Positions 15,872 to 44,378 of a DNA stretch of 64,000 nt are shown in pieces. The stretch's first letter is position 1. Each line of letters starts with the position of its first letter. The notes below the pieces were generated by a model. It ran no database searches. It saw only the letters and a program-made list of their open reading frames with translations, and was not told the origin of the DNA. The DNA is from Obrimoposthia wandeli (taxonomy: Eukaryota): positions 2,790,001-2,854,000 of the forward strand of contig CDROCS010000253.1 of assembly GCA_977020255.1 (NCBI GenBank). The letters run 5' to 3'. Position numbers and translations under genes: made by a program.

Positions 15872-17437
15872 ATGAATTTAACACAACTTTTACATCGCAA
15901 TGTACTGTTGCGTCCAGATCAAGACGCAGTATTTTATCGAGATAGATCTTTGACCTACCGCGAGTTGGCGAAACGGGTCGCATGCTTAGCAGGTGGACTG
16001 CGTAATATTGGTGTTAAAGAAGGCGAAAGCGTGCCTTTGTTGTCGATGAATTCCAGCCGCTATCTAGAATATCTGTTTGCCGTTCCTTGGGCTGGGGCAG
16101 CCTACAATTTGGTCAATGTGCGCTGGAGTGTTGCAGAAATAGCTTTCTCACTAGTTGATTCTAGTGCTCGCTTTCTTGTTGTGGATGACACCTTTGCTTC
16201 AATGGTGGCAGAGATAAAAGAAAAGACACCTCTACTGGAGTTTGTGATTTATGCCGGTGATGGCGAATGTCCTGAAGGCATGCTTAGCTATGAGCTATTG
16301 CTTGCAGAGGCGGAGCCGATTGAGGATGCTTATCGAAGCGGTGATGATCTTGCAGGTATCTTTTATACAGGCGGCACTACTGGTACGCCTAAAGGCGTTA
16401 TGTTGAGTCATACAAATTTAATGACGTTCGCATTGACAGGCGCTCAGATGAGTGGATTGTCTGCTCAGCCCCGTTGGTTGAATTGTGCCCCTTTGTTTCA
16501 TATCGCAGGTCTAGGTATGTTGTTGATGTCGTTTATGCTGGGGGGAACTCAAATTATATTACCTGCGTTTACTCCAGCTGAGGTGATAAAAACAATTCGT
16601 GAGCAGGACGTGACGGATATGTTGCTTGTTCCAACGATGATACAAATGCTGCTAGATTATCCCGATTTTGATGTGGATGACTTTGCGAGTATGCAACATA
16701 TTCTTTACGGTGCCTCTCCCATGCCTCAGGGAACGATGAATAAAGCGCTGAAGCAATTGCCTGATGTTGGTTTTATTCAAGGTTATGGCATGACCGAATG
16801 TGGTTTGATCTCTATTTCAGCTGCTAGCAACCACACTGCAGAAGGGAATGAGTCGGGACGGATCCGTAGTGCAGGTCTCCCTGGCCCTGTACAGCAAGTT
16901 CGTATTGTCGATGAGCTTGGTGTTCCAGTGCCTTCTGGTACTGTTGGTGAAATTACGCTTCGTGGGCCAAATATTATGCTGGGTTATTGGGGAAAACCTG
17001 AGTTAACTCAAAAAGCTGTTGTTGATGGTTGGTTGCACACAGGAGATGGTGGCTACATGGATGAGCAAGGCTATATCTTTGTGGTTGATCGAGTGAAGGA
17101 TATGATTATCTCAGGGGGAGAGAATATTTATTCTGCCGAAGTGGAGACAATTATTTCGCAACATCCGGCTGTCGCCCAGTGTGCGGTGATCGGTATTCCC
17201 TCTGAAGATTGGGGTGAGACAGTTCATGCAGTGATCGTACTTGCTCCAGGAGAAGAAAACTCAGATCGTCTGACCACCGAACAGCTTCGTGACTTCTGTA
17301 AAGTACATATTGCCAGTTACAAATGTCCTAAATCTATGGCCCTTATTGATTCTCTACCTATTTCTGGAGCGGGAAAAATACTCAAAAACGAATTACGTAA
17401 GCCTTATTGGGAAGGGCGTGAGGCACAGGTGTCCTAA
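15872..17437 (+). CDS. Long-chain acyl-CoA synthetase (AMP-binding)
   Basis: YTGGTTGTPKG, GYGMTE, HTGD, DRVKDMIISGGEN, GKILK motifs. Confidence 0.9.
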   Translation: MNLTQLLHRNVLLRPDQDAVFYRDRSLTYRELAKRVACLAGGLRNIGVKEGESVPLLSMNSSRYLEYLFAVPWAGAAYNLVNVRWSVAEIAFSLVDSSARFLVVDDTFASMVAEIKEKTPLLEFVIYAGDGECPEGMLSYELLLAEAEPIEDAYRSGDDLAGIFYTGGTTGTPKGVMLSHTNLMTFALTGAQMSGLSAQPRWLNCAPLFHIAGLGMLLMSFMLGGTQIILPAFTPAEVIKTIREQDVTDMLLVPTMIQMLLDYPDFDVDDFASMQHILYGASPMPQGTMNKALKQLPDVGFIQGYGMTECGLISISAASNHTAEGNESGRIRSAGLPGPVQQVRIVDELGVPVPSGTVGEITLRGPNIMLGYWGKPELTQKAVVDGWLHTGDGGYMDEQGYIFVVDRVKDMIISGGENIYSAEVETIISQHPAVAQCAVIGIPSEDWGETVHAVIVLAPGEENSDRLTTEQLRDFCKVHIASYKCPKSMALIDSLPISGAGKILKNELRKPYWEGREAQVS

Positions 17438-17460
17438 CAATACTGACTAAGTAAGTCAGC

Positions 17461-17525
17461 TATACCCAAACTACTTCAAGATTCAGCAGTCGGACCTTGT
17501 AGCATCTTCAAGTGGTACGGGTATA
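17461..17525. repeat. ERIC-like MITE, short copy inside the operon
   Basis: TATACCCAAACTACTTCAAGATTC...GCATCTTCAAGTGGTACGGGTATA (19/24 inverted match). Confidence 0.75.
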
Positions 17526-17558
17526 TATTCGTGAAATAACTTAAAGAGGGTATATCTA

Positions 17559-18329
17559 ATGAAAGAGATAACGAGTGTAGTTCATCTTGAACGTTATCCA
17601 GATGGTGTTGCCACACTAACTATGATGAAGGCAAAAACGCTTAACGCGCTTGACGAGGCGTTATTAGTCGAATTACTAGAAAAGCTTAAAGAAGCAGACG
17701 CTGACGATGATATTAAAGTTGTCATTCTCACCGGAAGCGGCCGCGGATTTTGCTCTGGGGTCGACCTTACGGGTGGTGTATTGCAAGAAAACGCAGATAC
17801 ACTGGATGACTGGATCAGACAATTCGCCAACCCGGTTGTAGAATACATACGATCCATGTCTACAGTGGTGATTGCGGCTGTAAATGGCGTTGCTGTCGGT
17901 GCTGGTGTTAGCCTTGCGCTTGCCTGTGACATTGTCATGTCTGCAGCATCAGCCCGATATTTTCTTAGCTTTGCCAAAGTTGGAGTGGCTATGGATATGG
18001 GAGCATCGTGGATTTTGAGCAGAAGAATCGGCTCGATGCGTACTGCTGCCTTAACTATGTCTGCTGAGTGTTTCAATGCAGAAATGGCGTTGCAGTGGGG
18101 GCTATGTTATGAAGTCGTGGATGATGCCGAACTGATGTTGCGAACTTGTGAATTTGCCAGCCGAATTGCCAGCCGACCGATCTTAACGCTGGGAGCTTTG
18201 AAGTCCCAGATAAATTACGCGAATAAAGCAACGCTATCTGAAACGTTGGACTATGAAGCACGGATGCAGGGAATGCTAATGAGAACGGATCAGACACAAC
18301 AACTCATCAAAGAGTTTTCAGAGCGGTAA
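17559..18329 (+). CDS. Enoyl-CoA hydratase/isomerase (crotonase family, PaaG-like)
   Basis: GRGFCSGVDL, AAVNGVAVGAGVSLALACD, D-x-G motif. Confidence 0.85.
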   Translation: MKEITSVVHLERYPDGVATLTMMKAKTLNALDEALLVELLEKLKEADADDDIKVVILTGSGRGFCSGVDLTGGVLQENADTLDDWIRQFANPVVEYIRSMSTVVIAAVNGVAVGAGVSLALACDIVMSAASARYFLSFAKVGVAMDMGASWILSRRIGSMRTAALTMSAECFNAEMALQWGLCYEVVDDAELMLRTCEFASRIASRPILTLGALKSQINYANKATLSETLDYEARMQGMLMRTDQTQQLIKEFSER

Positions 18330-18348: not shown

Positions 18349-18508
18349 ATACCAATGGCAATAAATATGTGATCATTCTAAATGGACTAAATATTCCAAT
18401 AACATCGTTGCTTTCAATCCCAATAGCCAGCTATTGCTCAATCAAGCGCCTTGTTCTTGAAAATTTATCCTCATTGATATTTGATCACTAACTTATTGCC
18501 ATTGGTAT
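18349..18508. repeat. 160-bp MITE with 16-bp perfect TIRs
   Basis: ATACCAATGGCAATAA...TTATTGCCATTGGTAT, plus internal GTGATCA/TGATCAC symmetry. Confidence 0.8.
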
Positions 18509-18795
18509 AAGCTTGTTTATGACGTTACTTGCTAAAATCCTTTATTTGTTTGGAAAGTCAGAATACGCCTCGCACATGCTCAAGTACTTCGCTCAATTCC
18601 CACTAACTAAACTGCGTTTAACGACATAATCGCGCTATCAGCTGGTTTGGAATAGCGCTGATAGGTTAAGGCTCCTAGAAAAAATTCAAACGTCATGGCT
18701 TTCTGACTCGATCTCTTTGATTTCGATAGGGTAACTTGCATGACAATGACCTAATGCTCCATAAAGGTCCAAATTATTGAGAGGAATTATAGTAA

Positions 18796-19740
18796 ATGAA
18801 TATGCCTATTAATGAACAGCATTTAACTGTTGGTCATTATTTTATCGACACATCAGAAATAACAATATCTGTTTTTGAATGGGGTTCGCAATACAAATCC
18901 CTCCTACCTACACTTGTGCTGATACATGCGACTGGCTTTCATGCCCGTTGCTGGGATAAAGTCGTAAAACATCTGGGTAATCGCCATATATTAGCAATTG
19001 ATTTACGAGGGCACGGTCAAAGCGATAATACCCCCATTGTAGACTGGAGAGCTTTTGGTCAGGATGTTGAAGAAGTACTCACTAGACTGGACATTGAGAA
19101 TGCGATCGGCATTGGCCATTCGATGGGTGGCTTCACAGTATGCTATACAGCTCATCTTAATCGGGATCTATTTTCTCAGATTATATTAATAGACCCTGCT
19201 ATTATGTCACCTGACTCTTATAGATGTGATAATAACCCAATCGCTGTAGCGGCAGGCGAACAACATCCCGTCGTAAAAAGACGTAATACTTTTTCTTCTG
19301 TTGATGAGATGTTCGCGCTGTACAAAAAACGCCCGCCATTCAATACCTTCGATCAGGGTGTATTGTTAGATTACTGCAAGTATGGACTGACTAAATCTGA
19401 AAGTGGACATAAATTTCAGCTGGCCAGTCCTCCAGTTTTTGAAGCTTCTGTTTATCAAAAAGCTACGACTTTTAAGGATATATATAAGATTGTTGAATCA
19501 ATATCACTACCCATTACGATCATAAGAGCCATGGAACCAGAGAGTTCGGAAGAGCAACGTAGCTTTATGTACTCACCGACTTGGCCCGATCTGGTAGCAA
19601 AACTACCTTCAGGTAAAGATATTCATTTACCGGATGCTAGCCACTTAGTACCTATGCAAAATCCGAAACGTATAGCGGATTTAATCCTTAGTGAAATTAC
19701 AAATCTAGGGGACTTAGACAATATAGAAAATGTAGCGTAG
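18796..19740 (+). CDS. Alpha/beta hydrolase
   Basis: HATGF, DLRGHG, GHSMGG nucleophile elbow, ASHLVPM catalytic His. Confidence 0.85.
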   Translation: MNMPINEQHLTVGHYFIDTSEITISVFEWGSQYKSLLPTLVLIHATGFHARCWDKVVKHLGNRHILAIDLRGHGQSDNTPIVDWRAFGQDVEEVLTRLDIENAIGIGHSMGGFTVCYTAHLNRDLFSQIILIDPAIMSPDSYRCDNNPIAVAAGEQHPVVKRRNTFSSVDEMFALYKKRPPFNTFDQGVLLDYCKYGLTKSESGHKFQLASPPVFEASVYQKATTFKDIYKIVESISLPITIIRAMEPESSEEQRSFMYSPTWPDLVAKLPSGKDIHLPDASHLVPMQNPKRIADLILSEITNLGDLDNIENVA

Positions 19741-19936
19741 GAGGCGATAAATTCACTTTTGTAGCAAGATAAATTCAGAGTATCTTCGACGGAAGCCTTA
19801 TCCCTGCCATATTCCATTAATAGCCCGACATCGGGAGTTGAATCCATAACCCTGAAATAGGTATATTCAAATCCCGATGTGTAAGCACTAATGTATAGTA
19901 GAGCACTACCCCCTAAGACCAGCTATCTACTAGATG

Positions 19937-20734
19937 TTAGCGAACTCGTTTAAGCGCATTTTTACTGAAATCACTGGGTTTTAGGCCAGTTTTAAATGCA
20001 AAGTTAGTCGACTTAAGTACAGTGCTTTTACCGTTTTGATGGTTAAATACTTTCGTTTCGTTTGGGCGCCAAAACTTACCAAGATACTGCTGATAATCCG
20101 TATAATTTAGGGTTTTAAGTAAAGTGCTTTTTCGATCATAAAAATCAATTTTTTGGGTCCTATATTCCTTTTTATCAATCCATACGATCCGCTTGGTATA
20201 ACCTGAATTTTTATCAACTGGAATTTGCTCTACCATGTAACTATCGAGTCCATTGAGTACGTCATCGCCTAAATATTTGTAGTTATATTTTTCTACTTCA
20301 AAGGAACTCAAATCTTCGAAAGCAAACTCGGAACCCATAAATGGGCCTGATTTATTGCTTGATGAAATTCGTTTTACACGTTTTAATGCGGGTAAATATA
20401 ACCATTGATCGTCTGCACCTACCGGGTGAGAAACACTTAAAAATGCGGTACCTTTGACATCTCTAGGCTTATTAAAAATAGTCAGACTCTTATCACCGTC
20501 GTCTAGTTGCTCTAGCGATTTCATTTTTATCTCCCGAATGCTTTCTTGTCCTTGCTTATTTCGTAGCAACATTCGCATCTCAGCGGTGCTATCATTCCAG
20601 CCTATATCACGTTGTTTAACTATTTTAGATATCTCTAGTCCCCGTTCTTCTGCCGTGATTGCAAAGCTTAGGTTACTAATAAAAATCAACGTGATAGCGC
20701 CAACAATATGAGTTATTATTTTTTTGGTTAACAT
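19937..20734 (-). CDS. Outer-membrane lipoprotein-sorting (LolA-fold) periplasmic protein
   Basis: Signal peptide; DDQWLYLPALKRVKRI and FMGSEFAFEDL motifs. Confidence 0.85.
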   Translation of the reverse strand: MLTKKIITHIVGAITLIFISNLSFAITAEERGLEISKIVKQRDIGWNDSTAEMRMLLRNKQGQESIREIKMKSLEQLDDGDKSLTIFNKPRDVKGTAFLSVSHPVGADDQWLYLPALKRVKRISSSNKSGPFMGSEFAFEDLSSFEVEKYNYKYLGDDVLNGLDSYMVEQIPVDKNSGYTKRIVWIDKKEYRTQKIDFYDRKSTLLKTLNYTDYQQYLGKFWRPNETKVFNHQNGKSTVLKSTNFAFKTGLKPSDFSKNALKRVR

Positions 20735-20777
20735 TTCATTATTCCTATTTTAGGTGTTTTATTTCGATGCTGAATTA

Positions 20778-23060
20778 TCAATTATCAATTGCCATTAACA
20801 ATGGCGGTAAAAACAGGAAATCGATAATCAATGCAGTAAATATGGTTATAGCGGTTAGTGCGCCCATGTCAGCATTCATCTGAAAGCTTGATTGCATCAA
20901 AACACTAAACCCTGCGATTAGCGCAAAGGAAGTCACCCATAATGCTCTCCCTACATTGTCAAAAGCATAATGAATAGCTTCAGCACTACTGGCTTGTCTC
21001 TCACGGCGGGCATGAAGGTATTTACTAAGAAAATGCACGGTATCATCAACAACAATCCCCAAAGTCATACCTATAACAACAGATAAGCCGAGACCCACTT
21101 GGCCGCTATAGAGTCCCCAAAATCCAAATGCCATTGATGCGGGCACTAAATTTGGCAGTAAACTAATAAGACCGTAACGCCAGCTCCGTAATGCTAGCCC
21201 TAATAATATTGAGATGAGCACTAACGCTAGCGAGGTGCCAATTAATAAACTCAATATATTGCGTTGACCGATATGGGCAAACATCAAGCTAGGACTGGCA
21301 ATATCAATCTCATACTCAGGAGAATGTTGGCTAAACCATAAATTTATTCTCTGTTCGAAGTCTATTATTTCATTGCTAGTCATATTATGAACAACCCCAG
21401 TGATTCGAGTTGACGACTTATCTATATCGAGTTGGTTATTTAAATCCAGACCGTAAGGTAATGACATCTCATATAACAACAAGTACTGTGCTGACATCTC
21501 CTTGTTTACCGGAAGCTTGTACCAGGTCTGATCGTCGCCATGCATGTTTTTATTTAAGCGTTTTAGGGTATCAGTGATAGTACTAACATGGTCTATTTCT
21601 GATTGTTGACGTAACCATTGGCTGAAATCTTCTATTTTTTGGAGATATTTAGGATCATTAATACCACTAGGAACACCTGTTTTTACAGATATTTCTAAGT
21701 ACATGACACCCGATAGATTTTCTTCCATATAATTAGTCGCCGTTCTAAACGGTATGCTTTCGTCAAAATACTTAATAAAGTTATCATTGAGCTGATTATT
21801 GGGGATAAATAAAGTCATCAGGATGATCAATGCGCTCATCAATGGCAGTAATAATTTACGTTTGCCCACGACAAAATCAGCAAATAAGGCCATTCTGTCT
21901 TTACTGCCACTTTGAGGAACGGTTACTTTGAATGGCAGTAGGATTAATAGTGCTGGAAATATTGTCATTGAAAGCACAAATGCTAACATTACCCCGATAG
22001 CAACCATATTACCCAAATCTCTAAATGGTGGAGAGTCAGAGAAGTTCATACTTAGGAAGCCTATAGCCGTAGTAATACTGGTTAAGAGAATGGGCTGAAA
22101 GTTGAGATTCAAGCTTTTAATAATAGCCTGCCGTTTATCTACCCCTTGGCGCATTTCATAAAACATTGAAGTTAATATATGCACACAGTCAGCAGTCGCC
22201 AGCGTCAGAATCATCGTTGGTGCAGAGGATGATGGACCCGTCAAATAAAACCCCAACCAGCCAACAATTCCCATTGTGGAAGCAATGCTCATTAAGGTAA
22301 CTAGTACTGTTGCAATGGTGCCACTTATAGTTCTCAATAAAAAACCAATACTTACAATAACTACGAGGAACATAAGAGGTATCAGAGTAATGCTATCCTT
22401 GCGAGAAACCTCACCAAATGAGGCATTGAGCATCACTCCGCCTGATAGGTAAACTTCATTCTCTGGGTTTTCTTCAAGAAATTTTCGCTTGATTTCTCGA
22501 ACACTGGCTGCTATTTCTGGAATCTCCTTAATAGGATTTATTCCGGGTAAATGTACTGTGACGTTAACAACTGAAACATGCCCCGACGGTGAAATTATTT
22601 TATGTACCAATAATGGGTCATTAAGTGCAATTCCCCTGATTTTTTCTAAATCAGACTGGGTAAGTTTACTGGGATCTCTCACCAAATTTTCAACTATTAA
22701 GTCATCTCCTGTTGAATAACTGTATTGATAGTTAGTGATAGAATCGACTCTGGTAGAGTAAGGTACTTGCCAGCTTTGATCGGTTAAACGTTTGATAGCA
22801 CTAAGATGTTCAGCATTGAAGGTATCACCTCCCTTAGGCGCGATAATAAAAGTAACGCTGTCACTTTTTGTGTAAACTTTCTGCATATTTTCAAAAGCAG
22901 TAAGTTGAGGATTTTCTTCACTAAAAAATATGTCGTATCCGTTTTTAAATACGAGGTTTTTTGCGCCTGTTGTGGCAATAGCAACCACTGTTATGCATGC
23001 CAAAATAACCCAAATAGGGTGCTTACATACAATACTGAAAACTTTATCTCTCATTACCAA
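20778..23060 (-). CDS. MMPL/RND-family (HAE3-like) transporter
   Basis: Two MMPL repeats, TLATADCVH, GIVVDDTVHF. Confidence 0.85.
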   Translation of the reverse strand: MVMRDKVFSIVCKHPIWVILACITVVAIATTGAKNLVFKNGYDIFFSEENPQLTAFENMQKVYTKSDSVTFIIAPKGGDTFNAEHLSAIKRLTDQSWQVPYSTRVDSITNYQYSYSTGDDLIVENLVRDPSKLTQSDLEKIRGIALNDPLLVHKIISPSGHVSVVNVTVHLPGINPIKEIPEIAASVREIKRKFLEENPENEVYLSGGVMLNASFGEVSRKDSITLIPLMFLVVIVSIGFLLRTISGTIATVLVTLMSIASTMGIVGWLGFYLTGPSSSAPTMILTLATADCVHILTSMFYEMRQGVDKRQAIIKSLNLNFQPILLTSITTAIGFLSMNFSDSPPFRDLGNMVAIGVMLAFVLSMTIFPALLILLPFKVTVPQSGSKDRMALFADFVVGKRKLLLPLMSALIILMTLFIPNNQLNDNFIKYFDESIPFRTATNYMEENLSGVMYLEISVKTGVPSGINDPKYLQKIEDFSQWLRQQSEIDHVSTITDTLKRLNKNMHGDDQTWYKLPVNKEMSAQYLLLYEMSLPYGLDLNNQLDIDKSSTRITGVVHNMTSNEIIDFEQRINLWFSQHSPEYEIDIASPSLMFAHIGQRNILSLLIGTSLALVLISILLGLALRSWRYGLISLLPNLVPASMAFGFWGLYSGQVGLGLSVVIGMTLGIVVDDTVHFLSKYLHARRERQASSAEAIHYAFDNVGRALWVTSFALIAGFSVLMQSSFQMNADMGALTAITIFTALIIDFLFLPPLLMAIDN

Positions 23061-23169
23061 ACTCCATAATGACGAATCATTATTTATTCATAGAATAACG
23101 GGCTATGCACCGCATAAGTATTTTTTAGTCACGTTGACTGGAAAATACTATAACTTGGGATTTTGAAAT

Positions 23170-23220
23170 TTAGTTAGGTAACTCAAACAGATGGCGTGTC
23201 TTAAATGCCAATTTGGGTTA
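23170..23220 (-). promoter_or_regulatory. Promoter/operator of the MMPL operon (copy A of a duplicated 51-bp element)
   Basis: 43/51 ungapped identity to 24402-24452; TATAGT -10 candidate downstream. Confidence 0.7.
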
Positions 23221-23253
23221 CTATAATAGAAATATTCAAAATACATTTACGTT

Positions 23254-24288
23254 ATGGACAATCTCACTTCAAACTCAAACATCATATTAAACATGTTGAT
23301 TCAATCAGCAAGAGAGCTTGGTTTTTCGGTCAATGAGCTGATAGATATGCTGCCTGATGGCACTTGTGAAGATGCGAATGAAGAAACAAGATATCCAGCA
23401 GATAAAGTGCCATTGATATGGCAATGGTTAGAACAACAGAGTTCAGAATCAAATGTTGGTTTCAGACTGGCCGGACAGTTGAGACTTAAGTCTCAAACTA
23501 TGCTGGCATTTTTATTTATGAGCAGTGAAACCTTAGGCGCAGGGTTAGATAAAGTTATCAAATTTCAGCACCTGATCAGTGAAGCCATCAAGTGCAGTAT
23601 CGAAGTCCAGGACAATGATTGTAGTTTTGTGTTCCAGAGTAACAGCGATCCAAATTTTGAAATACGACAACAAAATGAATATGCTGCATTGCTGTTTCAT
23701 CATTGGTTATCTGATCTATTGGGTAAATCGTGGCGTTTAAAAAGGGTAGACTTTGCTCACCCTAAGCCCTGCGATGTCAGTGAGCACAAAAAATTGTTCC
23801 AGTGTGAGCTATTGTTTTCCGCATCTGTTAATCGATTTATTTTCGAGGAATCCTTGCTGGAATTACCAATCCCTTATGCTAATGAGAGGATGAATCGGTT
23901 GCATGAACAGCATGCAGAGCAACTGGAGTTGCAAATAAAAAAAAGAAAATTGGTCAATCAAGTTATATCGTTAATTACTGAAAATTTAATGACGGGAGAT
24001 ACCCATATTCATGATGTTGCCAAAAAATGTCAGCTGTCAGAACGGCAATTAAAGTCACAGTTGGAGCATGAAGGGACTAGTTTTACTGAATTACTAGATA
24101 ACACAAGGAAAGAACGAGCGGTGATGTTACTCACCACCACAGATAAAAAAATCTCAGACATAGCCGACGCTTGTGGTTTTTCAGAGCCAAGCACGTTTAA
24201 CCGTGCGTTTAAGCGATGGTTTAATAGCCCTCCTAGTAAGTACCGTCGTTCTACGGGTAAAATCGCCATAAAAATCAAAGATAAATAA
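23254..24288 (+). CDS. AraC-family regulator (OruR-like N-terminal domain)
   Basis: C-terminal double HTH (SERQL...GFSEPSTFNRAFKRW); RVDFAHP motif. Confidence 0.9.
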   Translation: MDNLTSNSNIILNMLIQSARELGFSVNELIDMLPDGTCEDANEETRYPADKVPLIWQWLEQQSSESNVGFRLAGQLRLKSQTMLAFLFMSSETLGAGLDKVIKFQHLISEAIKCSIEVQDNDCSFVFQSNSDPNFEIRQQNEYAALLFHHWLSDLLGKSWRLKRVDFAHPKPCDVSEHKKLFQCELLFSASVNRFIFEESLLELPIPYANERMNRLHEQHAEQLELQIKKRKLVNQVISLITENLMTGDTHIHDVAKKCQLSERQLKSQLEHEGTSFTELLDNTRKERAVMLLTTTDKKISDIADACGFSEPSTFNRAFKRWFNSPPSKYRRSTGKIAIKIKDK

Positions 24289-24401
24289 TAAACGGCTAAA
24301 CATTGAGTCTTTTAAAAGAATTAAATAGCCTATAACTAAATGTACTCCAACTAGTCTCCCCACGATAAGCTTAATTTGGCACTATAGTGCTTTTGATTGG
24401 C

Positions 24402-24452
24402 TAACCAAAATTGACATTTCAGACATGCCGCCTGTTTGAACTACCTAACTAA
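24402..24452 (+). promoter_or_regulatory. Promoter/operator of the CxxCH membrane-protein gene (copy B)
   Basis: 43/51 identity to the reverse complement of 23170-23220; TATGAT -10 candidate at near-identical spacing. Confidence 0.7.
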
Positions 24453-24566
24453 TTATTTAAACCACAGTTATGATGCAGTCAAAAAACGAAACGTTCTTGC
24501 TGAGCATGTAGCGCTTCTTAAACGATAATATCCCTAATAATAAGTAACAAAAAGACAAATTTCATC

Positions 24567-25328
24567 ATGAAGATAACAAATAATAGAGGCTTCAACCTCG
24601 CTTCGTTAGGTATTACAGTGCGTGCTATGTTTAGCGGGTATTTAGTGGTCATTGGTCTTGGACTACTGGTTGCGGGAGGACAAATATTACTGACTCATGG
24701 TATGGCCGATGGTAAATTGGGTTTGTCGATAGATGATGTAGTTTACAGTTACTATGGCGACCGCCAAGGCAGCAAAATAGAAAATAAATTACAGGGTTCA
24801 ATGAAAGATAAGGCACCAAGGGTCGTCCGGCAAGATATTATCAAATGGGTAAGAAATGGTTCAAGTGAAAAGTTATGGGACCAAGGAATTAAAACCCATT
24901 TTGACAATCATTGTATCAAGTGCCACGGAGTGATCCCTGGCTTGCCAGACTTTACCAGCCTAGTAGGGGTTAAAAGTGTTGCTCAGATAGACAAAGGAGC
25001 AAGTGTTAGTAGTCTGACCCGTGTCTCGCATATTCACTTATTTGGAATAGCTTTTATTTTTCTGTTTGTCGGCTTAATTTTTAGTTTAACTGTCGGTATT
25101 CCTAACTGGTTAAAAACGCTAGTCATAGTGATGCCATTTATTTTTTTAGTTGTTGACGTATTGTCTTGGTGGCTGACTAAAATTGATCCTGCTTTTGCTT
25201 GGTTAACCATTATTGCGGGCATGGGATATACCTTAGCATCCGCTTATATGTGGTTTACTTCGATGTGGCAAATGTGGTGGTATCCTTATAAAGGAAAATA
25301 TTCTACAGAAAACACTTGGTTTGATTAA
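24567..25328 (+). CDS. Uncharacterised membrane protein with a single CxxCH (c-type haem) motif
   Basis: N-terminal TM, soluble segment with CIKCHG, then SHIHLFG and three C-terminal hydrophobic segments. Confidence 0.7.
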   Translation: MKITNNRGFNLASLGITVRAMFSGYLVVIGLGLLVAGGQILLTHGMADGKLGLSIDDVVYSYYGDRQGSKIENKLQGSMKDKAPRVVRQDIIKWVRNGSSEKLWDQGIKTHFDNHCIKCHGVIPGLPDFTSLVGVKSVAQIDKGASVSSLTRVSHIHLFGIAFIFLFVGLIFSLTVGIPNWLKTLVIVMPFIFLVVDVLSWWLTKIDPAFAWLTIIAGMGYTLASAYMWFTSMWQMWWYPYKGKYSTENTWFD

Positions 25329-41093: not shown

Positions 41094-41234
41094 TTTATTG
41101 TGAACGGTCGCTGTCAGGATGAACACTGATTTGCACAATCCCTAAAAGGACAAAGCAAAAAAGGTGACCTGATGATAGCCGCCCCCTCAATAAAAACTCA
41201 AGCCATTTTGAGTCAAACTATAGGTGTGATAACA

Positions 41235-42356
41235 ATGACTAATGATGATATAAGACATGAAGCGACAGCCGCAATTGCCAGGGGATCTTCTGACCCCTTA
41301 ACTTTTGAACAAGTCACGTTGCAATCACCCAGAGCAGATGAAGTACTGATTAAAATTGTTGCTTCTGGGATATGCCATACGGATCTGGTTTGCCTTCATC
41401 AGGAATTACCTGTGCCACTTCCTATGGTGCTAGGACACGAAGGCGCAGGAATTGTTGTTGAGATAGGCAGCGCAGTGCAAGATCTAGTGCCAGGTGACCA
41501 TGTTGTTTTATCGTTCAATTCTTGCGGTCAATGTCCTTCTTGTGATAGCGAATTGCCTTCCTACTGTTACCATTTTATGGAGAATAACTTCAGCGGAAGT
41601 CGTAGCGATGGTACCGGCACTATGGAACAAAATGGTGAAGCGGTTAACGCTAATTTCTTCGGACAATCTTCTTTTGCAACAATGGCTATTGCCAACGTTA
41701 GAAATACGGTGAAAGTTAGCAAAGATCTGCCGCTCGAAATGCTTGCTCCATTGGGCTGTGGCATACAGACCGGTGCAGGGACTGTTTTTAACTCGTTGCC
41801 AGTGACCGAAAAGCATTCGCTGGCTATATTCGGCGGAGGGGCTGTTGGTCTCAGTGCACTGATGGCTGCCAAGTTAATAGGCGCTGCTCCTCTTATTTTG
41901 GTCGAGCCTTTAGCAGACAGAAGAGCTTTGGCGCTAGAGCTTGGAGCCGATCATGTAATTGACCCATTTGCTGTGGAAAATGTTGTCGAAGAGATAAAAA
42001 AATTAGTCGGTGGAGTTGACTTTAGCCTAGAAATGACAGGCATTCCAGCAGTCGCCAAACAATGCATTGATGTCCTTAAGCCATTAGGAACTTGTGCACT
42101 CGTTGGTGCAGCACCCGCCGATGCTGAAATAAGCATTAATATCATGGAAATGCTCGTTACCGGAAGAAAGATCGTTGGCATAGTGGAAGGGGACGCGCAG
42201 CCGAGAACGTTTATTCCTCAGCTCATTAAATATTATGAAGAAGGGCGTTTCCCTTTTGACCGCCTCATTGACTTCTTCCCTTTCGAATCGCTAAACGAAG
42301 CGATAAAAGCGCAGGAGAGCGGACAAAGTATCAAACCTGTCGTTCGTATGGGTTAG
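41235..42356 (+). CDS. Zn-dependent alcohol dehydrogenase, aryl-alcohol/geraniol dehydrogenase type
   Basis: GICHTD, GHEGAG, CGQCPSC...C, FFGQSSFAT, LGCGIQTGAG; AGGTG RBS before the ATG at 41235. Confidence 0.85.
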   Translation: MTNDDIRHEATAAIARGSSDPLTFEQVTLQSPRADEVLIKIVASGICHTDLVCLHQELPVPLPMVLGHEGAGIVVEIGSAVQDLVPGDHVVLSFNSCGQCPSCDSELPSYCYHFMENNFSGSRSDGTGTMEQNGEAVNANFFGQSSFATMAIANVRNTVKVSKDLPLEMLAPLGCGIQTGAGTVFNSLPVTEKHSLAIFGGGAVGLSALMAAKLIGAAPLILVEPLADRRALALELGADHVIDPFAVENVVEEIKKLVGGVDFSLEMTGIPAVAKQCIDVLKPLGTCALVGAAPADAEISINIMEMLVTGRKIVGIVEGDAQPRTFIPQLIKYYEEGRFPFDRLIDFFPFESLNEAIKAQESGQSIKPVVRMG

Positions 42357-42436
42357 CCACAGCTAGCGTCATCGTTATTTATGGCGCTGTCTTCTATTTT
42401 TAGTTACTTATTTTTTTATGTTAGTAATCCCTTTTA

Positions 42437-42467
42437 GGGCTGTTTTAATCGACAGCCCATTTTTTTC
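42437..42467 (+). terminator. Rho-independent terminator after ADH
   Basis: GGGCTGT-loop-ACAGCCC followed by a T run. Confidence 0.75.
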
Positions 42468-42513
42468 TATAATTAGTTTGCTGAGAGCCCATCCAATAGT
42501 CTGTCTTTAGTTA

Positions 42514-42559
42514 AAACCAACGAAAGTTTGCTGTTAGATTTACTATAGTTGGTCATAAT
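42514..42559 (+). promoter_or_regulatory. Operator plus sigma70-like promoter of the rubredoxin fusion gene
   Basis: AAACCAACGAAAGTTTG + CTGTTA-N17-CATAAT. Confidence 0.75.
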
Positions 42560-42730
42560 TTTTTAATGAACAGTCGCTGGTAGAATTGAAAGGGGCTGTG
42601 AACTATTGAGTACATGCTTTAATGACTGGATAAGCGAAAAACGCAAATATTTTAAAGTCTAGGCTTTAAAATAACTAGGCCTTAAAGAAATGATGAATGT
42701 TATTCCTGAGTACTGTTGCAGAGGTGAAAT

Positions 42731-44152
42731 ATGAGTTACAAAATTTTAGAGTGTTTAGTCTGTGGATTTATCTACGATGAGGGCAAAGGTAATCCAAAAG
42801 AAGGCCTCCCTGCAGGAACTCGTTGGGAAGATGTGCCTGATGATTGGACATGTCCAGATTGTGGTGTAGGAAAGGCAGATTTTGAAATGGTGGCTATAAG
42901 CCGTATTGCTGTTGCTACTAAAGAAAAGGTTGCTGAGGTTGCTATTGAATCAGTACCTGCCATAGCGGCTATGTTGGCAGTTCCTACAATTGACTGGGAT
43001 CGTAAACCCGTTGTAATTATTGGTACTGGCTTGGCGGGTTACCATTTGGCGCGTGAGTTCAGAAAACAAGACAAAGAAACACCGCTGATAATGCTGACTG
43101 CTGATGATGGTCGTTTCTATTCTAAACCCATGATCTCGACAGCTTTTGCCAAAGCTAAACAACCCGATCAACTTGCCAATGCTACGGCGGCTGATATGGC
43201 TGAAGAGTTACAGGCAGATATACGAATATTTAGTAAAGTTACAGAAATAGATGCTGATTCACAGATTTTAAAGGTAGGTGAAGACAGCATTGAGTATGGA
43301 AAGCTTGTATTAGCTTCCGGTGCTAAATGTACTGAAGCACCACTGAAGGGAAATGGCTTGAGCCGAGTTTACAGTGTTAATGATTTATTAGATTACACTC
43401 GGTTCCGTACCTCATTGGTTGGCAAGAAAAAGATATTAATTATTGGGGCAGGTTTAATTGGCTCGGAGTATGCCAATGATATGATCCAGTCTGGCTTCAT
43501 GATTGAGGTTGTTGAGCCTATGCCTAGTGTACTCGGGACGTTATTGCCTGAACAGGCCTCACTTGCGGTTCAGAAAAGTCTTGAACAGGCAGGCGTAAAA
43601 TATCATTTTGGTACTGTGGTTGAGAAGGTGGATAAATTTGGAAATGGAATTCAGGCTACATTGGCTAATGGTACTGTTATTGAAGCCGATGCGGTGTTGT
43701 CTGCTATTGGCGTTCGCCCTGATTTAACACTCGCTAGTCTTACCAAATTGGATACTAATCGAGGCATCCTAACCGATCGTTCATTGCAAACCAGTGCTAA
43801 AAAAATCTATGCACTAGGCGATTGTGCAGAGGTCGATGGCAACTTGTTGTTTTATGTTGCTCCGTTAATGGAAAGTGCCAGAGTGTTGGGTAAAGTGCTC
43901 AGTGGTCAGCAAGCTGAAGTACATTATGGTGTGATGCCGGTGATGATAAAAACGACCCTGTGTCCGGTGGTGGTATCGCCGCCACCGAGGGACGCAGAAG
44001 GGGAGTGGCATGTTAAAGTTGACCGTTGTAATGTACTGGCAAGGTTTGTTTCACCAGAAGGCAAGTTACTGGGATTTGCGTTGACGGGTGATGCGACAAA
44101 AGAAAAGGATGGGTTAAGTGCCGAGACACAGCCACTTATGAGTTATGTCTAA
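42731..44152 (+). CDS. Rubredoxin--NAD(P)H:rubredoxin reductase fusion (RubA-RubB-like)
   Basis: CLVCG...CPDCG rubredoxin, linker, then IIGTGLAGY...YSKPMIS, GAGLIG, ALGDCAE. Confidence 0.9.
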   Translation: MSYKILECLVCGFIYDEGKGNPKEGLPAGTRWEDVPDDWTCPDCGVGKADFEMVAISRIAVATKEKVAEVAIESVPAIAAMLAVPTIDWDRKPVVIIGTGLAGYHLAREFRKQDKETPLIMLTADDGRFYSKPMISTAFAKAKQPDQLANATAADMAEELQADIRIFSKVTEIDADSQILKVGEDSIEYGKLVLASGAKCTEAPLKGNGLSRVYSVNDLLDYTRFRTSLVGKKKILIIGAGLIGSEYANDMIQSGFMIEVVEPMPSVLGTLLPEQASLAVQKSLEQAGVKYHFGTVVEKVDKFGNGIQATLANGTVIEADAVLSAIGVRPDLTLASLTKLDTNRGILTDRSLQTSAKKIYALGDCAEVDGNLLFYVAPLMESARVLGKVLSGQQAEVHYGVMPVMIKTTLCPVVVSPPPRDAEGEWHVKVDRCNVLARFVSPEGKLLGFALTGDATKEKDGLSAETQPLMSYV

Positions 44153-44282
44153 CCTTATGAAGTAAAAATAAGGGGTTGTGGTTTCTATTAGTCAAAAAGA
44201 CTGAGAGAGGCTGCAACCTTTATTGGTTTGAAATAAGCAATTTTAGCTACCCGTTACCTAGGTTATTGATCAAATAGGTTGT

Positions 44283-44370
44283 TATACCAATTACATTTAA
44301 TAACTGCCCATTTGTACTCGTTAATTTTTCTTAGCACAACAAGAACACATACTTAATGTGATTGGTATTA
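44283..44370. repeat. 88-bp MITE-like element
   Basis: TATACCAATTACATT...AATGTGATTGGTATT (13/15 inverted match). Confidence 0.6.
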
Positions 44371-44378
44371 GACTTTGA

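What the first reader, a model, noticed from the sequence alone, without database searches (positions are those of the whole stretch)
19937..25328. Duplicated 51-bp promoter couples an uncharacterised CxxCH membrane protein to an MMPL/LolA-like transporter around an AraC gene
Seen in sequence: the reverse complement of 23170-23220 and 24402-24452 align without gaps at 43/51 (TAACCmAAATTGrCATTTmAGACAyGCCryCTGTTTGAryTACCTAACTAA). Each is followed by a -10-like hexamer (TATAGT/TATGAT) at almost the same offset. They point outward on either side of the AraC gene. Inference: a three-gene AraC regulon in which a haem-c-motif membrane protein works with an MMPL transporter and a LolA-fold periplasmic protein, for example in handling or redox-modifying a lipid-like substrate. 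I know of no described system with this composition.
Basis: partly seen in the sequence, partly recalled or inferred. Interest (0 to 1): 0.75.

Follow-up and report, generated by a model that had tools for sequence, protein, structure and literature searches.

The report
Duplicated AraC-type promoter joins two operons
A marine Colwellia-like bacterium carries two copies of the DNA site that its AraC-type regulator probably binds, one before a lipid/hydrocarbon transporter operon and one before a haem-motif membrane protein; this looks like a local rewiring of gene control, not a new conserved molecular system.

Summary
Window 23170-23220(-) and 24402-24452(+) match 43/51 (65 nt at 78%). They are the only two copies in the 1.35-Gb assembly. 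Each is followed 19-20 nt later by a -10-like hexamer, about 86 nt before a start codon: one of an HAE3/MMPL-LolA-like operon, one of a CxxCH membrane protein (Pfam PF27139, Aq_1264_TM).

I read the element as the cognate operator and -35 region of the AraC-family gene lying between the copies. A related bipartite motif lies beside four independent orthologues of this rare regulator, in the same orientation and with the same -10 spacing. Their divergent partner is a methyltransferase or a small secreted protein, never MMPL/LolA or PF27139.

Elsewhere, MMPL-LolA-like modules usually carry a TetR gene and a ~400-aa third gene; here only a 34-codon remnant of that gene survives. The closest PF27139 genes follow a MarR gene, which is absent here.

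So this is a lineage-specific rewiring, seen only in the window and one 97%-identical contig. It puts two units under one AraC-type activator inside an alkane-degradation island of a Colwelliaceae bacterium. It is not a conserved three-part system. Co-regulation is plausible but untested. A direct functional link between the haem protein and the transporter is not supported.

The parts
19788..19889 (-). Remnant (34 codons, profile positions 280-313 of 401) of the ~400-aa third gene that follows LolA-like in related modules
   Evidence: hmmsearch with a profile of six third-gene proteins against the six-frame translation of 18500-20100: E 3.9e-7, in the right strand and place. A tblastn hit covers the same spot.
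19937..20734 (-). Periplasmic LolA-like protein (265 aa, signal peptide), second gene of the operon
   Evidence: Pfam PF17131 LolA_like, 218.6 bits. The N-terminal signal sequence ends ...SFA. Homologues occur in 92 of 301 sampled genomes.
20778..23054 (-). HAE3/MMPL-type RND inner-membrane transporter (758 aa from ATG 23054; the ORF reaches TTG 23060)
   Evidence: Pfam MMPL, 96.8 bits. TIGR00921 HAE3 matches over the full length, E 2e-49. GGAG lies 7 nt before ATG 23054. MMPL lies directly upstream of LolA-like in 29 of the 30 best loci.
23147..23152 (-). -10-like hexamer TATAGT of the predicted MMPL promoter (TSS about 23140, leader about 86 nt)
   Evidence: Read from the sequence. A -10-like RTTAT block lies at the same distance from CTAAC in all six aligned operator regions.
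23156..23220 (-). Copy A of the operator / -35-region element (51-bp core 23170-23220), about -80 to -33 of the predicted MMPL promoter
   Evidence: establish the repeat. Searches show the related motif next to AraC orthologues.
23222..23227 (+). TATAAT hexamer facing the AraC gene: candidate -10 of its own promoter, abutting copy A (possible autoregulation)
   Evidence: Read from the sequence. No counterpart exists beside copy B. This is inference only.
23254..24288 (+). AraC/XylS-family regulator (344 aa: Arabinose_bd PF12625 plus HTH_18)
   Evidence: Pfam. It lies below the cut-offs of NCBIfam QhpR, GliR and CypR. Only 6 relatives of 44% identity or more exist among 5.8 billion proteins. 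dN/dS against L014 is 0.18.
24402..24466 (+). Copy B of the element (51-bp core 24402-24452), upstream of the PF27139 gene
   Evidence: It is also present in L014 with one substitution.
24469..24474 (+). -10-like hexamer TATGAT of the predicted PF27139 promoter (TSS about 24481, leader about 86 nt)
   Evidence: Read from the sequence.
24567..25328 (+). PF27139 (Aq_1264_TM) membrane protein, 253 aa: four TM helices and a small periplasmic helical domain with an invariant CxxCH
   Evidence: 2931 homologues, all listed ones carrying PF27139. C116, C119, H120, H44, M46, H155 and H157 are invariant in 43 sequences. AF2 model, pLDDT 75.8. dN/dS against L014 is 0.088.

Best explanation
The 51-65 bp repeat is the cognate operator, overlapping the -35 region, of the rare AraC/XylS-family regulator encoded between the two copies.

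**Ancestral state (shown by comparison).** The regulator gene travels with one such operator-promoter that drives whatever gene lies divergently next to it.

**State in this lineage.** In this Colwelliaceae lineage that promoter drives an HAE3 RND / LolA-like operon. That operon has lost the local TetR-type regulator gene and the third gene usual in its relatives. A second copy of the about 65-bp element sits in front of a PF27139 haem-motif membrane protein gene, whose closest relatives instead follow a MarR gene.

**Predicted mechanism (inferred).** A regulator dimer, loaded with an unknown and probably hydrophobic effector, occupies about -80 to -33. It recruits RNA polymerase to promoters that have a -10 but no usable -35. 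This switches on both outward units together and probably autoregulates the regulator's own gene through copy A.

**What is not implied.** The link between the transporter and the haem protein is shared control in one lineage. It is not a conserved physical or pathway partnership.
For: 1. **The repeat is real and unique.** 43/51 in the core and 65 nt at 78%; 0 expected by chance; the only two copies in the assembly.
2. **The motif goes with the regulator.**
   - The pattern GTTAGR-N17/18-RTGTCY-N5-GYC occurs in the AraC-upstream spacer, same orientation, in L110, L111 and L112 (L113-L115 are copies of the L112 locus). These regulators are 48-63% identical to the window's.
   - The pattern occurs twice in the window and twice in L014. 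It occurs in none of 104 other fetched loci.
   - L116 (44% identity) has a diverged version sharing GTTAGGT, TCAAACA and TGTTTGA.
   - Local alignment of the core is significant against L111 (p<=0.002 and 0.01) and L116 (p<=0.002).
3. **Conserved architecture.** The six-way alignment keeps TTGRC, AGACAY, TGTTT and CTAAC blocks. It also keeps a -10-like RTTAT about 19-20 nt after CTAAC, pointing at the divergent gene. This is the layout of class II AraC-type promoters (established knowledge: araI1-I2, XylS-Pm, RhaS).
4. **The partner gene varies while the motif stays.** It is a methyltransferase in three loci, a secreted protein in L116, and MMPL here.
5. **Both target units lack their usual local regulators.**
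   - Four upstream ~200-250-aa genes scanned are TetR, and three more loci have a gene of that size there; others have LysR or other genes. A ~400-aa third gene follows in 11/16 related modules. Here only a remnant of it survives.
   - A MarR gene precedes PF27139 in 6/6 closest relatives. There is no MarR orthologue here.
6. **The genes are alive.** dN/dS against L014 is 0.035, 0.088 and 0.18, with dS about 0.1. The two cores show 1 change in 102 nt.
Against: - No expression or binding data exist.
- The promoters were read by eye. The sigma-70 consensus scan did not call them; that is expected for a promoter lacking a -35, but it is no support.
- Similarity of the core to L110 and L112 is limited to the short bipartite motif. 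It is not significant by local alignment. The motif pattern was also derived after seeing those sequences.
- No clear pair of direct-repeat half-sites typical of AraC dimers could be defined.
- Copy B is known from only two near-identical genomes. Its conservation there (1/102) is not significantly better than the rest of the spacers (12/375).
- Assignment of the site to this regulator rests on association, not on a test.
Confidence: 0.62

Rival explanations
1. One reading: the haem-c-motif protein, the MMPL transporter and the LolA-like protein form one dedicated functional system under AraC control, for example redox modification plus transport of a lipid-like substrate.
For: - The shared promoter element implies co-expression.
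- At genome level, PF27139-type genes and LolA-like genes co-occur more often than chance in 301 sampled genomes: 23/33 against 69/268, odds ratio 6.6, p 1e-6, uncorrected for phylogeny.
- The locus lies in an alkane/lipid catabolic island.
Against: - The arrangement is found only in the window and L014.
- None of the 16 extended MMPL-LolA loci showed a PF27139 or AraC homologue.
- None of 30 PF27139 loci with about 1.5-kb flanks showed MMPL or LolA nearby.
- Where both are in one genome they are far apart.
- The co-occurrence is confounded by phylogeny and genome size.
Confidence: 0.12
2. Copy B is a scar of a rearrangement, for example an inverted duplication of the regulator cassette followed by loss of one copy. 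It has no regulatory role, and the PF27139 gene is expressed from another promoter.
For: - The locus has been rearranged on several sides. The third gene is reduced to a remnant. Synteny with L014 ends right after the PF27139 stop. No MarR or TetR gene is present.
- Conservation of copy B between the window and L014 is not statistically distinguishable from the rest of the spacer.
Against: - The core stays 84% identical while everything around it is at background.
- The -10-like hexamer keeps its spacing.
- The 8 positions that differ between A and B include at least two (core positions 13 and 24) that also vary among the orthologous operators.
- No remnant of a second regulator gene lies beside copy B.
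Confidence: 0.14
3. The element is bound by a different regulator encoded elsewhere, and its nearness to the AraC gene is incidental.
For: No binding data exist. The motif contains TTGAC-like and palindromic pieces that other regulator families could use.
Against: - The motif follows the AraC orthologues across four other independent loci with different neighbouring genes.
- It has no other copy in the assembly. A site for a global regulator would be expected at many promoters.
Confidence: 0.07
4. The two arms are terminal inverted repeats of a mobile or invertible segment carrying the AraC gene, or a structured RNA element.
For: Inverted 65-nt arms flank a 1181-bp segment holding one gene.
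Against: - There are no target-site duplications, no transposase or recombinase, and only one pair in 1.35 Gb.
- The orthologues have a single copy.
- There is no Rfam match.
- The short hairpin in copy A is not kept in copy B.
Confidence: 0.03

Closest known systems
Class II AraC/XylS-type activation (AraC at araI1-I2/PBAD, XylS at Pm, RhaS at rhaBAD), from established knowledge
   Same: - The regulator has an N-terminal ligand domain and a C-terminal double helix-turn-helix.
- The operator of about 45-50 bp ends over the -35 position of a promoter that has a -10 but no good -35.
- The regulator gene is divergent from its target, and autoregulation is likely.
   Different: - The half-sites are not defined.
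- The effector is unknown.
- The same operator is present twice in inverted orientation around the regulator gene, serving two unrelated units.
Alkane-responsive AraC/XylS regulators CypR, AlkR and APR1 (PMC8784404; PMC11784139)
   Same: - They are AraC/XylS activators next to hydrocarbon-metabolism genes, and APR1 also autoregulates.
- The window is an alkane island: rubredoxin-reductase fusion, MalT/LuxR-type regulator, alcohol dehydrogenase, acyl-CoA synthetase.
- NCBIfam CypR gives a weak hit.
   Different: - The score is far below the CypR cut-off (82 against 500 bits).
- The targets here are a transporter and a haem-motif protein, not a monooxygenase.
- No effector is known.
TOL_3187/TOL_3188 of Thalassolituus oleivorans MIL-1 (PMC6304351)
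   Same: - It is an MMPL plus LolA-like module followed by a domain-less, porin-like gene.
- In T. oleivorans it is induced 42-fold, or expressed exclusively, on n-C28.
- The same three-gene layout is common in sampled Gammaproteobacteria.
   Different: - There MMPL and LolA-like are fused in one protein; here they are two genes.
- The third gene is reduced to a 34-codon remnant here.
- Orthology to TOL_3187 was not tested.
HAE3 RND systems HpnN (hopanoid export) and AmeABCD (monoterpene efflux) (PMC6394551)
   Same: - It is an HAE3-type RND pump moving hydrophobic molecules out of the inner membrane.
- It has a LolA-superfamily periplasmic partner, as AmeB does.
   Different: - The periplasmic partner belongs to a different family (PF17131, not DUF1329).
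- There are no DUF1302 or COG4447 partners in this operon.
Pfam PF27139 (Aq_1264_TM), often mislabelled 'elongation factor-1 alpha' or 'cytochrome c'
   Same: - The match is full-length at 58-98% identity.
- The CxxCH and the membrane-surface His/Met residues are invariant.
   Different: - The family has no known function.
- Here it has an AraC-type promoter in place of the MarR gene of its closest relatives.

Membership tests
AraC/XylS family transcription activator | C-terminal double helix-turn-helix DNA-binding domain | tested here: met
   HTH_18 73.7 bits and HTH_AraC 45.4 bits, residues 256-332
AraC/XylS family transcription activator | N-terminal effector/dimerisation domain | tested here: met
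   Arabinose_bd PF12625, 113.9 bits, residues 43-205
AraC/XylS family transcription activator | Operator adjoining or overlapping the -35 of the target promoter | tested here: inconclusive
   Predicted from sequence only: the element ends 19-20 nt before a -10-like hexamer in both copies and in four orthologous loci. No TSS or footprint data.
AraC/XylS family transcription activator | Effector-dependent activation of the target | not testable with these tools
   Needs reporter or binding assays
NCBIfam equivalogs QhpR / GliR / CypR | Score above the curated cut-off | tested here: not met
   195.8 against 250, 132.2 against 570, and 82.3 against 500 bits
HAE3 family RND transporter | Full-length match to RND/MMPL models | tested here: met
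   Pfam MMPL 96.8 bits (cut-off 20.5). TIGR00921 aligned 16-756 of the protein to 5-732 of the 733-position model, E 2e-49, though 168 bits is below its subfamily cut-off of 352.
LolA_like (PF17131) periplasmic protein | Domain match and export signal | tested here: met
   218.6 bits over the whole model; N-terminal signal sequence
MMPL / LolA-like / porin-like three-gene module (as TOL_3187-3188) | MMPL gene directly upstream of the LolA-like gene | tested here: met
   43-nt gap in the window; the same order in 29 of the 30 best loci; fused open frames of 858-1108 aa exist
MMPL / LolA-like / porin-like three-gene module (as TOL_3187-3188) | Intact ~400-aa third gene downstream | tested here: not met
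   Only 34 codons remain at 19788-19889; no other copy in the window
MMPL / LolA-like / porin-like three-gene module (as TOL_3187-3188) | Induction by long-chain alkanes | not testable with these tools
   Reported for T. oleivorans only (PMC6304351)
Pfam PF27139 Aq_1264_TM | Membership by homology to proteins carrying the family | tested here: met
   All 120 listed homologues (58-98% identity, full length) carry PF27139. Atlas clusters are 97-100% PF27139. The model is not in the local Pfam copy.
c-type cytochrome | CxxCH haem-attachment motif, conserved | tested here: met
   C116, C119 and H120 are invariant in 43 sequences
c-type cytochrome | Recognisable cytochrome c fold or family, periplasmic location, covalent haem | tested here: inconclusive
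   No Pfam cytochrome c hit. The best PDB sequence hit is a bc1 cytochrome c subunit at E 0.77. No specific fold match. Periplasmic location is inferred from topology. Haem attachment is untestable here.
Transposable element or MITE | Target-site duplications, a transposase, several copies | tested here: not met
   No direct repeats outside the arms; the only gene inside is the AraC gene; one pair in 1.35 Gb

The most novel reading that the evidence does not exclude
This rare AraC regulator and its operator-promoter act as a portable control cassette. In one Colwelliaceae lineage the cassette replaced the local repressors of two units (a TetR gene in many related modules, MarR). In doing so it built a new hydrocarbon/lipid-responsive regulon. 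That regulon gives the first functional clue for PF27139, a family with thousands of members that is highly conserved and uncharacterised. The clue is that this haem-c membrane protein acts in the handling or oxidation of hydrophobic substrates at the periplasmic face, alongside HAE3 transport.
Probability: 0.15. Interest if true: 0.55.

Novelty: new member of a known kind. Interest (0 to 1): 0.3.

Why it matters
The locus is a clean natural example of regulon growth by copying a complete activator-dependent operator-promoter. Two units lose their local repressor genes and come under one activator. This can be tested directly with two 65-bp fragments and one protein.

It also offers a lead, though a weak one, for the function of PF27139. 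That family is widespread and highly conserved (about 60% identity from a Colwelliaceae gammaproteobacterium to the betaproteobacterium Methylovorus). It is a haem-motif membrane protein family that is still mislabelled in databases.

The locus does not reveal a new kind of molecular system.

Tried and rejected
- **Distant AraC paralogues.** 80 GTDB loci and 79 metagenome loci at 24-33% identity: none has MMPL or LolA within 6-7 kb. This is uninformative for the element.
- **Flank homology between the copies.** Upstream 110 nt gives p 0.036. The leaders are at background: identity 0.34 against 0.27 +/- 0.045. I could not decide whether the duplication was 65 nt long or longer.
- **Second inverted pair I2** (23305-23326 / 24482-24503). 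It is not collinear with the main repeat, so I treat it as chance.
- **Third motif hit at 44124-44153(-).** 0.26 expected per window, and it does not stand out in local alignment. I treat it as chance.
- **Remnants of MarR or TetR genes in the spacers.** None found.
- **MarR, methyltransferase and TauE homologues in the window.** None found. The best MarR on contig C253 is 37% identical and lies 1.7 Mb away. The methyltransferase was found only on another contig.
- **Fold of the PF27139 protein.** Foldseek against the PDB gave nothing at E<=0.001. VIA-align gave only generic four-helix bundles, Z up to 9.2.
- **Rfam.** No credible match.
- **Sigma-70 consensus scan.** It does not call the two promoters.
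- **Papers naming Aq_1264 or PF27139.** None found.

Full report
**1. The observation**

The two stretches are in the sequence as described. The reverse complement of 23170-23220 and 24402-24452 differ at 8 of 51 positions. The repeat finder extends the inverted repeat to 65 nt (23156-23220 / 24402-24466, 78%). A short-word BLAST gives 57.2 bits, against a maximum of 30.1 bits in 30 shuffled windows.

The window is part of contig C253 (at least 4.5 Mb) of a 1.35-Gb assembly with 6,912 contigs that holds many organisms. I searched the whole assembly with a 32-nt core (up to 3 mismatches) and with each half (up to 2 mismatches). These searches find no third copy on C253. Elsewhere they give only control-level hits.

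Similarity ends at about 65 nt. Upstream flanks and the leaders are at background.

**2. Anatomy**

Reading towards the target genes, both copies end in CCTAAC. A -10-like hexamer follows 20 nt later in copy A (TATAGT, 23152-23147) and 19 nt later in copy B (TATGAT, 24469-24474). No usable -35 is present. The predicted starts are near 23140(-) and 24481(+), which leaves leaders of about 86 nt in both cases.

- **Copy A** faces a two-gene operon.
  - The first gene is an HAE3/MMPL RND transporter. Its start is best placed at ATG 23054, behind a GGAG.
  - The second gene, 43 nt downstream, is a signal-peptide-bearing LolA_like (PF17131) protein.
- **Copy B** faces a 253-aa protein with four predicted membrane helices and a small periplasmic helical domain that carries CxxCH.
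- **Between the copies** lies a 344-aa AraC/XylS regulator (Arabinose_bd plus HTH_18). It falls below the curated cut-offs of its nearest named NCBIfam models, QhpR, GliR and CypR.
- **A TATAAT hexamer** at 23222-23227 faces the regulator gene and abuts copy A. Autoregulation is therefore possible, but this is inference.

**3. What the element is**

The regulator is rare. A search of 5.8 billion proteins gave only six relatives of 44% identity or more. A metagenome scan added one locus. I obtained DNA for four independent orthologous loci.

| Locus | Identity to window regulator | Divergent neighbour | Downstream |
|---|---|---|---|
| L111 | 63% | 223-aa SAM methyltransferase | contig ends |
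| L110 | 50% | 221-aa SAM methyltransferase | TauE gene |
| L112 (L113-L115 are copies) | 48% | 223-aa SAM methyltransferase | TauE gene |
| L116 | 44% | small secreted protein, no Pfam family | 214-aa gene, no Pfam family |

None of the loci has MMPL, LolA-like or PF27139 genes.

All of these loci carry a related bipartite motif in the spacer next to the regulator gene, in the same orientation relative to it.

- The pattern GTTAGR-N17/18-RTGTCY-N5-GYC matches L110, L111 and L112-115 once each. It matches the window-derived loci and L014 twice each. It matches none of 104 other loci.
- A shorter pattern gave two chance hits in 195 loci.
- L116 has a diverged version that shares GTTAGGT, TCAAACA and TGTTTGA with the window copies.
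- Local alignment of the 51-bp cores is significant against L111 and L116, but not against L110 or L112. For those two loci the case rests on the short motif and on their clear similarity to L111.
- The six-way alignment keeps TTGRC, AGACAY, TGTTT and CTAAC blocks. It also keeps a -10-like RTTAT at a fixed distance, pointing at the divergent gene.

An operator of about 45-50 bp that ends over the -35 position of a promoter lacking a -35 is the classic layout of class II AraC/XylS activation (established knowledge). I therefore read the element as this regulator's own operator-promoter. Copy A is the ancestral divergent promoter. Copy B is an extra copy.

**4. The composition is not conserved**

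*PF27139 gene.*
- The 253-aa protein belongs to Pfam PF27139 (Aq_1264_TM). It has 2931 homologues, and the best 120 are 58-98% identical. They are often mislabelled 'elongation factor-1 alpha' or 'cytochrome c'.
- In six independent loci of its closest relatives (69-76% identity), the gene directly follows a MarR-type gene on the same strand. Those MarR proteins are 70-78% identical to each other.
- The window has no MarR gene and no remnant of one. The best MarR on contig C253 is 37% identical and lies far away.
- In more distant genomes the gene stands alone in varied contexts. None of 30 sampled loci has a MarR, MMPL or LolA neighbour within about 1.5 kb.

*MMPL-LolA-like pair.*
- This pair is by itself a widespread module. 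LolA-like homologues occur in 92 of 301 sampled genomes of the class.
- The MMPL gene lies directly upstream in 29 of the 30 best loci. Fused open frames exist.
- I extended 16 loci. The four upstream ~200-250-aa genes that I scanned are TetR-family, and three further loci have a gene of that size in the same place. Others have LysR or other genes upstream. A mutually homologous ~400-aa protein with no Pfam family follows in 11 of 16.
- In the window there is no TetR gene. Of the third gene only 34 codons remain, at 19788-19889 (E 4e-7).

*The window's arrangement elsewhere.*
- Only L014, a 3.9-kb contig 96.8% identical in DNA, shares the arrangement, with both copies of the element.
- Its synteny with the window ends just after the PF27139 stop codon.
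- Against L014 all three genes are under purifying selection: dN/dS 0.035, 0.088 and 0.18, with dS about 0.1.
- The two cores show one change in 102 nt. That is well below the synonymous rate, but not significantly below the rest of the spacers (12/375).

**5. Context and likely role**

A GlnS gene in the window is 88-91% identical to Colwellia and Litorilituus proteins, so the contig is from a Colwelliaceae bacterium.

The window reads as an alkane/lipid catabolic island. It holds a rubredoxin-rubredoxin reductase fusion, a MalT/LuxR-type regulator, a zinc alcohol dehydrogenase, an acyl-CoA synthetase, an enoyl-CoA hydratase and a FabK/NMO-like reductase. Earlier notes of this scan also report a DUF1302-DUF1329-YCF48-RND cassette and a beta-oxidation module; I did not test those.

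Published work bears on the module.
- In Thalassolituus oleivorans, a fused MMPL + LolA-like protein rose 42-fold on n-C28. The domain-less porin-like protein encoded next to it was made only on n-C28 (PMC6304351).
- The characterised HAE3 pumps move hopanoids (HpnN) or export monoterpenes (AmeABCD) (PMC6394551).
- AraC/XylS regulators that sense alkanes are known: CypR, AlkR, and APR1 with n-C32 as ligand and autoregulation (PMC8784404, PMC11784139).

From this I infer that the effector is a hydrophobic compound and that the transporter moves a hydrophobic molecule across the periplasm. Neither point is shown.

**6. The haem-motif protein**

CxxCH (C116, C119, H120) is invariant in 43 diverse sequences. 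So are H44 and M46 at the outer end of helix 1, M79, and H155 and H157 at the outer end of helix 2.

The AF2 model (pLDDT 75.8) shows a four-helix membrane bundle. Neither Foldseek nor VIA-align finds a specific relative. No paper names the family.

My best guess is a mono-haem c protein with a second metal or haem site at the periplasmic membrane surface, acting in electron transfer. Confidence in this is low.

**7. Verdict**

- The repeat is real, unique, and most likely a duplicated AraC-type operator-promoter.
- Co-regulation of the transporter operon and the PF27139 gene is a fair prediction (about 0.6).
- The proposed three-part functional system is not supported. Each part has a different conserved context elsewhere, and the arrangement is confined to one lineage.
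- A genome-level co-occurrence of PF27139-type and LolA-like genes exists (odds ratio 6.6). It is uncorrected for phylogeny and I give it little weight.
- The kind of thing is known: an AraC-type regulon and a duplicated cis-element. The particular regulator, its operator and this rewiring are new members of that kind.

Noticed in passing
window 19788-19889 (-): A 34-codon remnant of the ~400-aa, C-terminal-Phe, probably outer-membrane protein that follows LolA-like in 11 of 16 related modules. The module here has lost its third component, while MMPL and LolA-like stay intact.
   Followed up: yes
window 41172-47240 and 15872-18329: Alkane-catabolism signature: Zn alcohol dehydrogenase (41172-42356), rubredoxin-rubredoxin reductase fusion (42731-44152), MalT/LuxR-type (AlkS-like) regulator (44379-47240), acyl-CoA synthetase (15872-17437), enoyl-CoA hydratase (17559-18329).
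   Followed up: partly
window 44124-44153 (-): A third match to the short operator pattern, overlapping the stop codon of the rubredoxin reductase gene and facing the MalT/LuxR regulator gene. It shares GCCA and TGAGTTA with copy A but lacks the distal TTGRC block and a well-placed -10. 0.26 such hits are expected per window.
   Followed up: partly
L014 2640-3931 against window 25371 onward: Synteny between the window and its 97%-identical relative breaks just after the PF27139 stop. The relative continues with a TonB-dependent receptor gene, the window with a FabK/NMO-like gene on the other strand.
   Followed up: partly
L016 10001-12197; L261, L266, L269: In one close relative and in several members of a 36-41%-identical paralogue group, the PF27139 gene overlaps or abuts a downstream gene of about 480 aa. 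In L016 that gene is a short-chain dehydrogenase. This is a recurrent pairing that might say more about the family's function than the window does.
   Followed up: no
L006/L007 7050-8750; L008 5876-8765; L010 4998-5531: Peroxiredoxin (AhpC/Redoxin) genes lie near PF27139 genes in three unrelated loci; in Methylovorus the arrangement is divergent. This may be chance.
   Followed up: no
G001:C48, G029:C191, G162:C5, G092:C373: Open frames of 858-1108 aa contain the LolA-like match. For G001:C48 (L198) an MMPL match is confirmed upstream on the same strand. This is consistent with MMPL + LolA-like fusions like T. oleivorans TOL_3187.
   Followed up: partly
assembly G000 as a whole: G000 has 1.35 Gb in 6,912 contigs and carries MarR and PF27139 homologues on many different contigs. 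It holds many organisms. Contig C253 (at least 4.5 Mb) looks like a near-complete Colwelliaceae chromosome.
   Followed up: partly
L110 9095-11468; L111 18-1853; L112 2175-4935: The orthologues of the AraC gene form a conserved trio: methyltransferase (divergent), AraC, TauE-family gene (convergent). In L112-L115 cytochrome o oxidase subunit III/IV genes lie beside it. The function of that methyltransferase unit is unknown.
   Followed up: no
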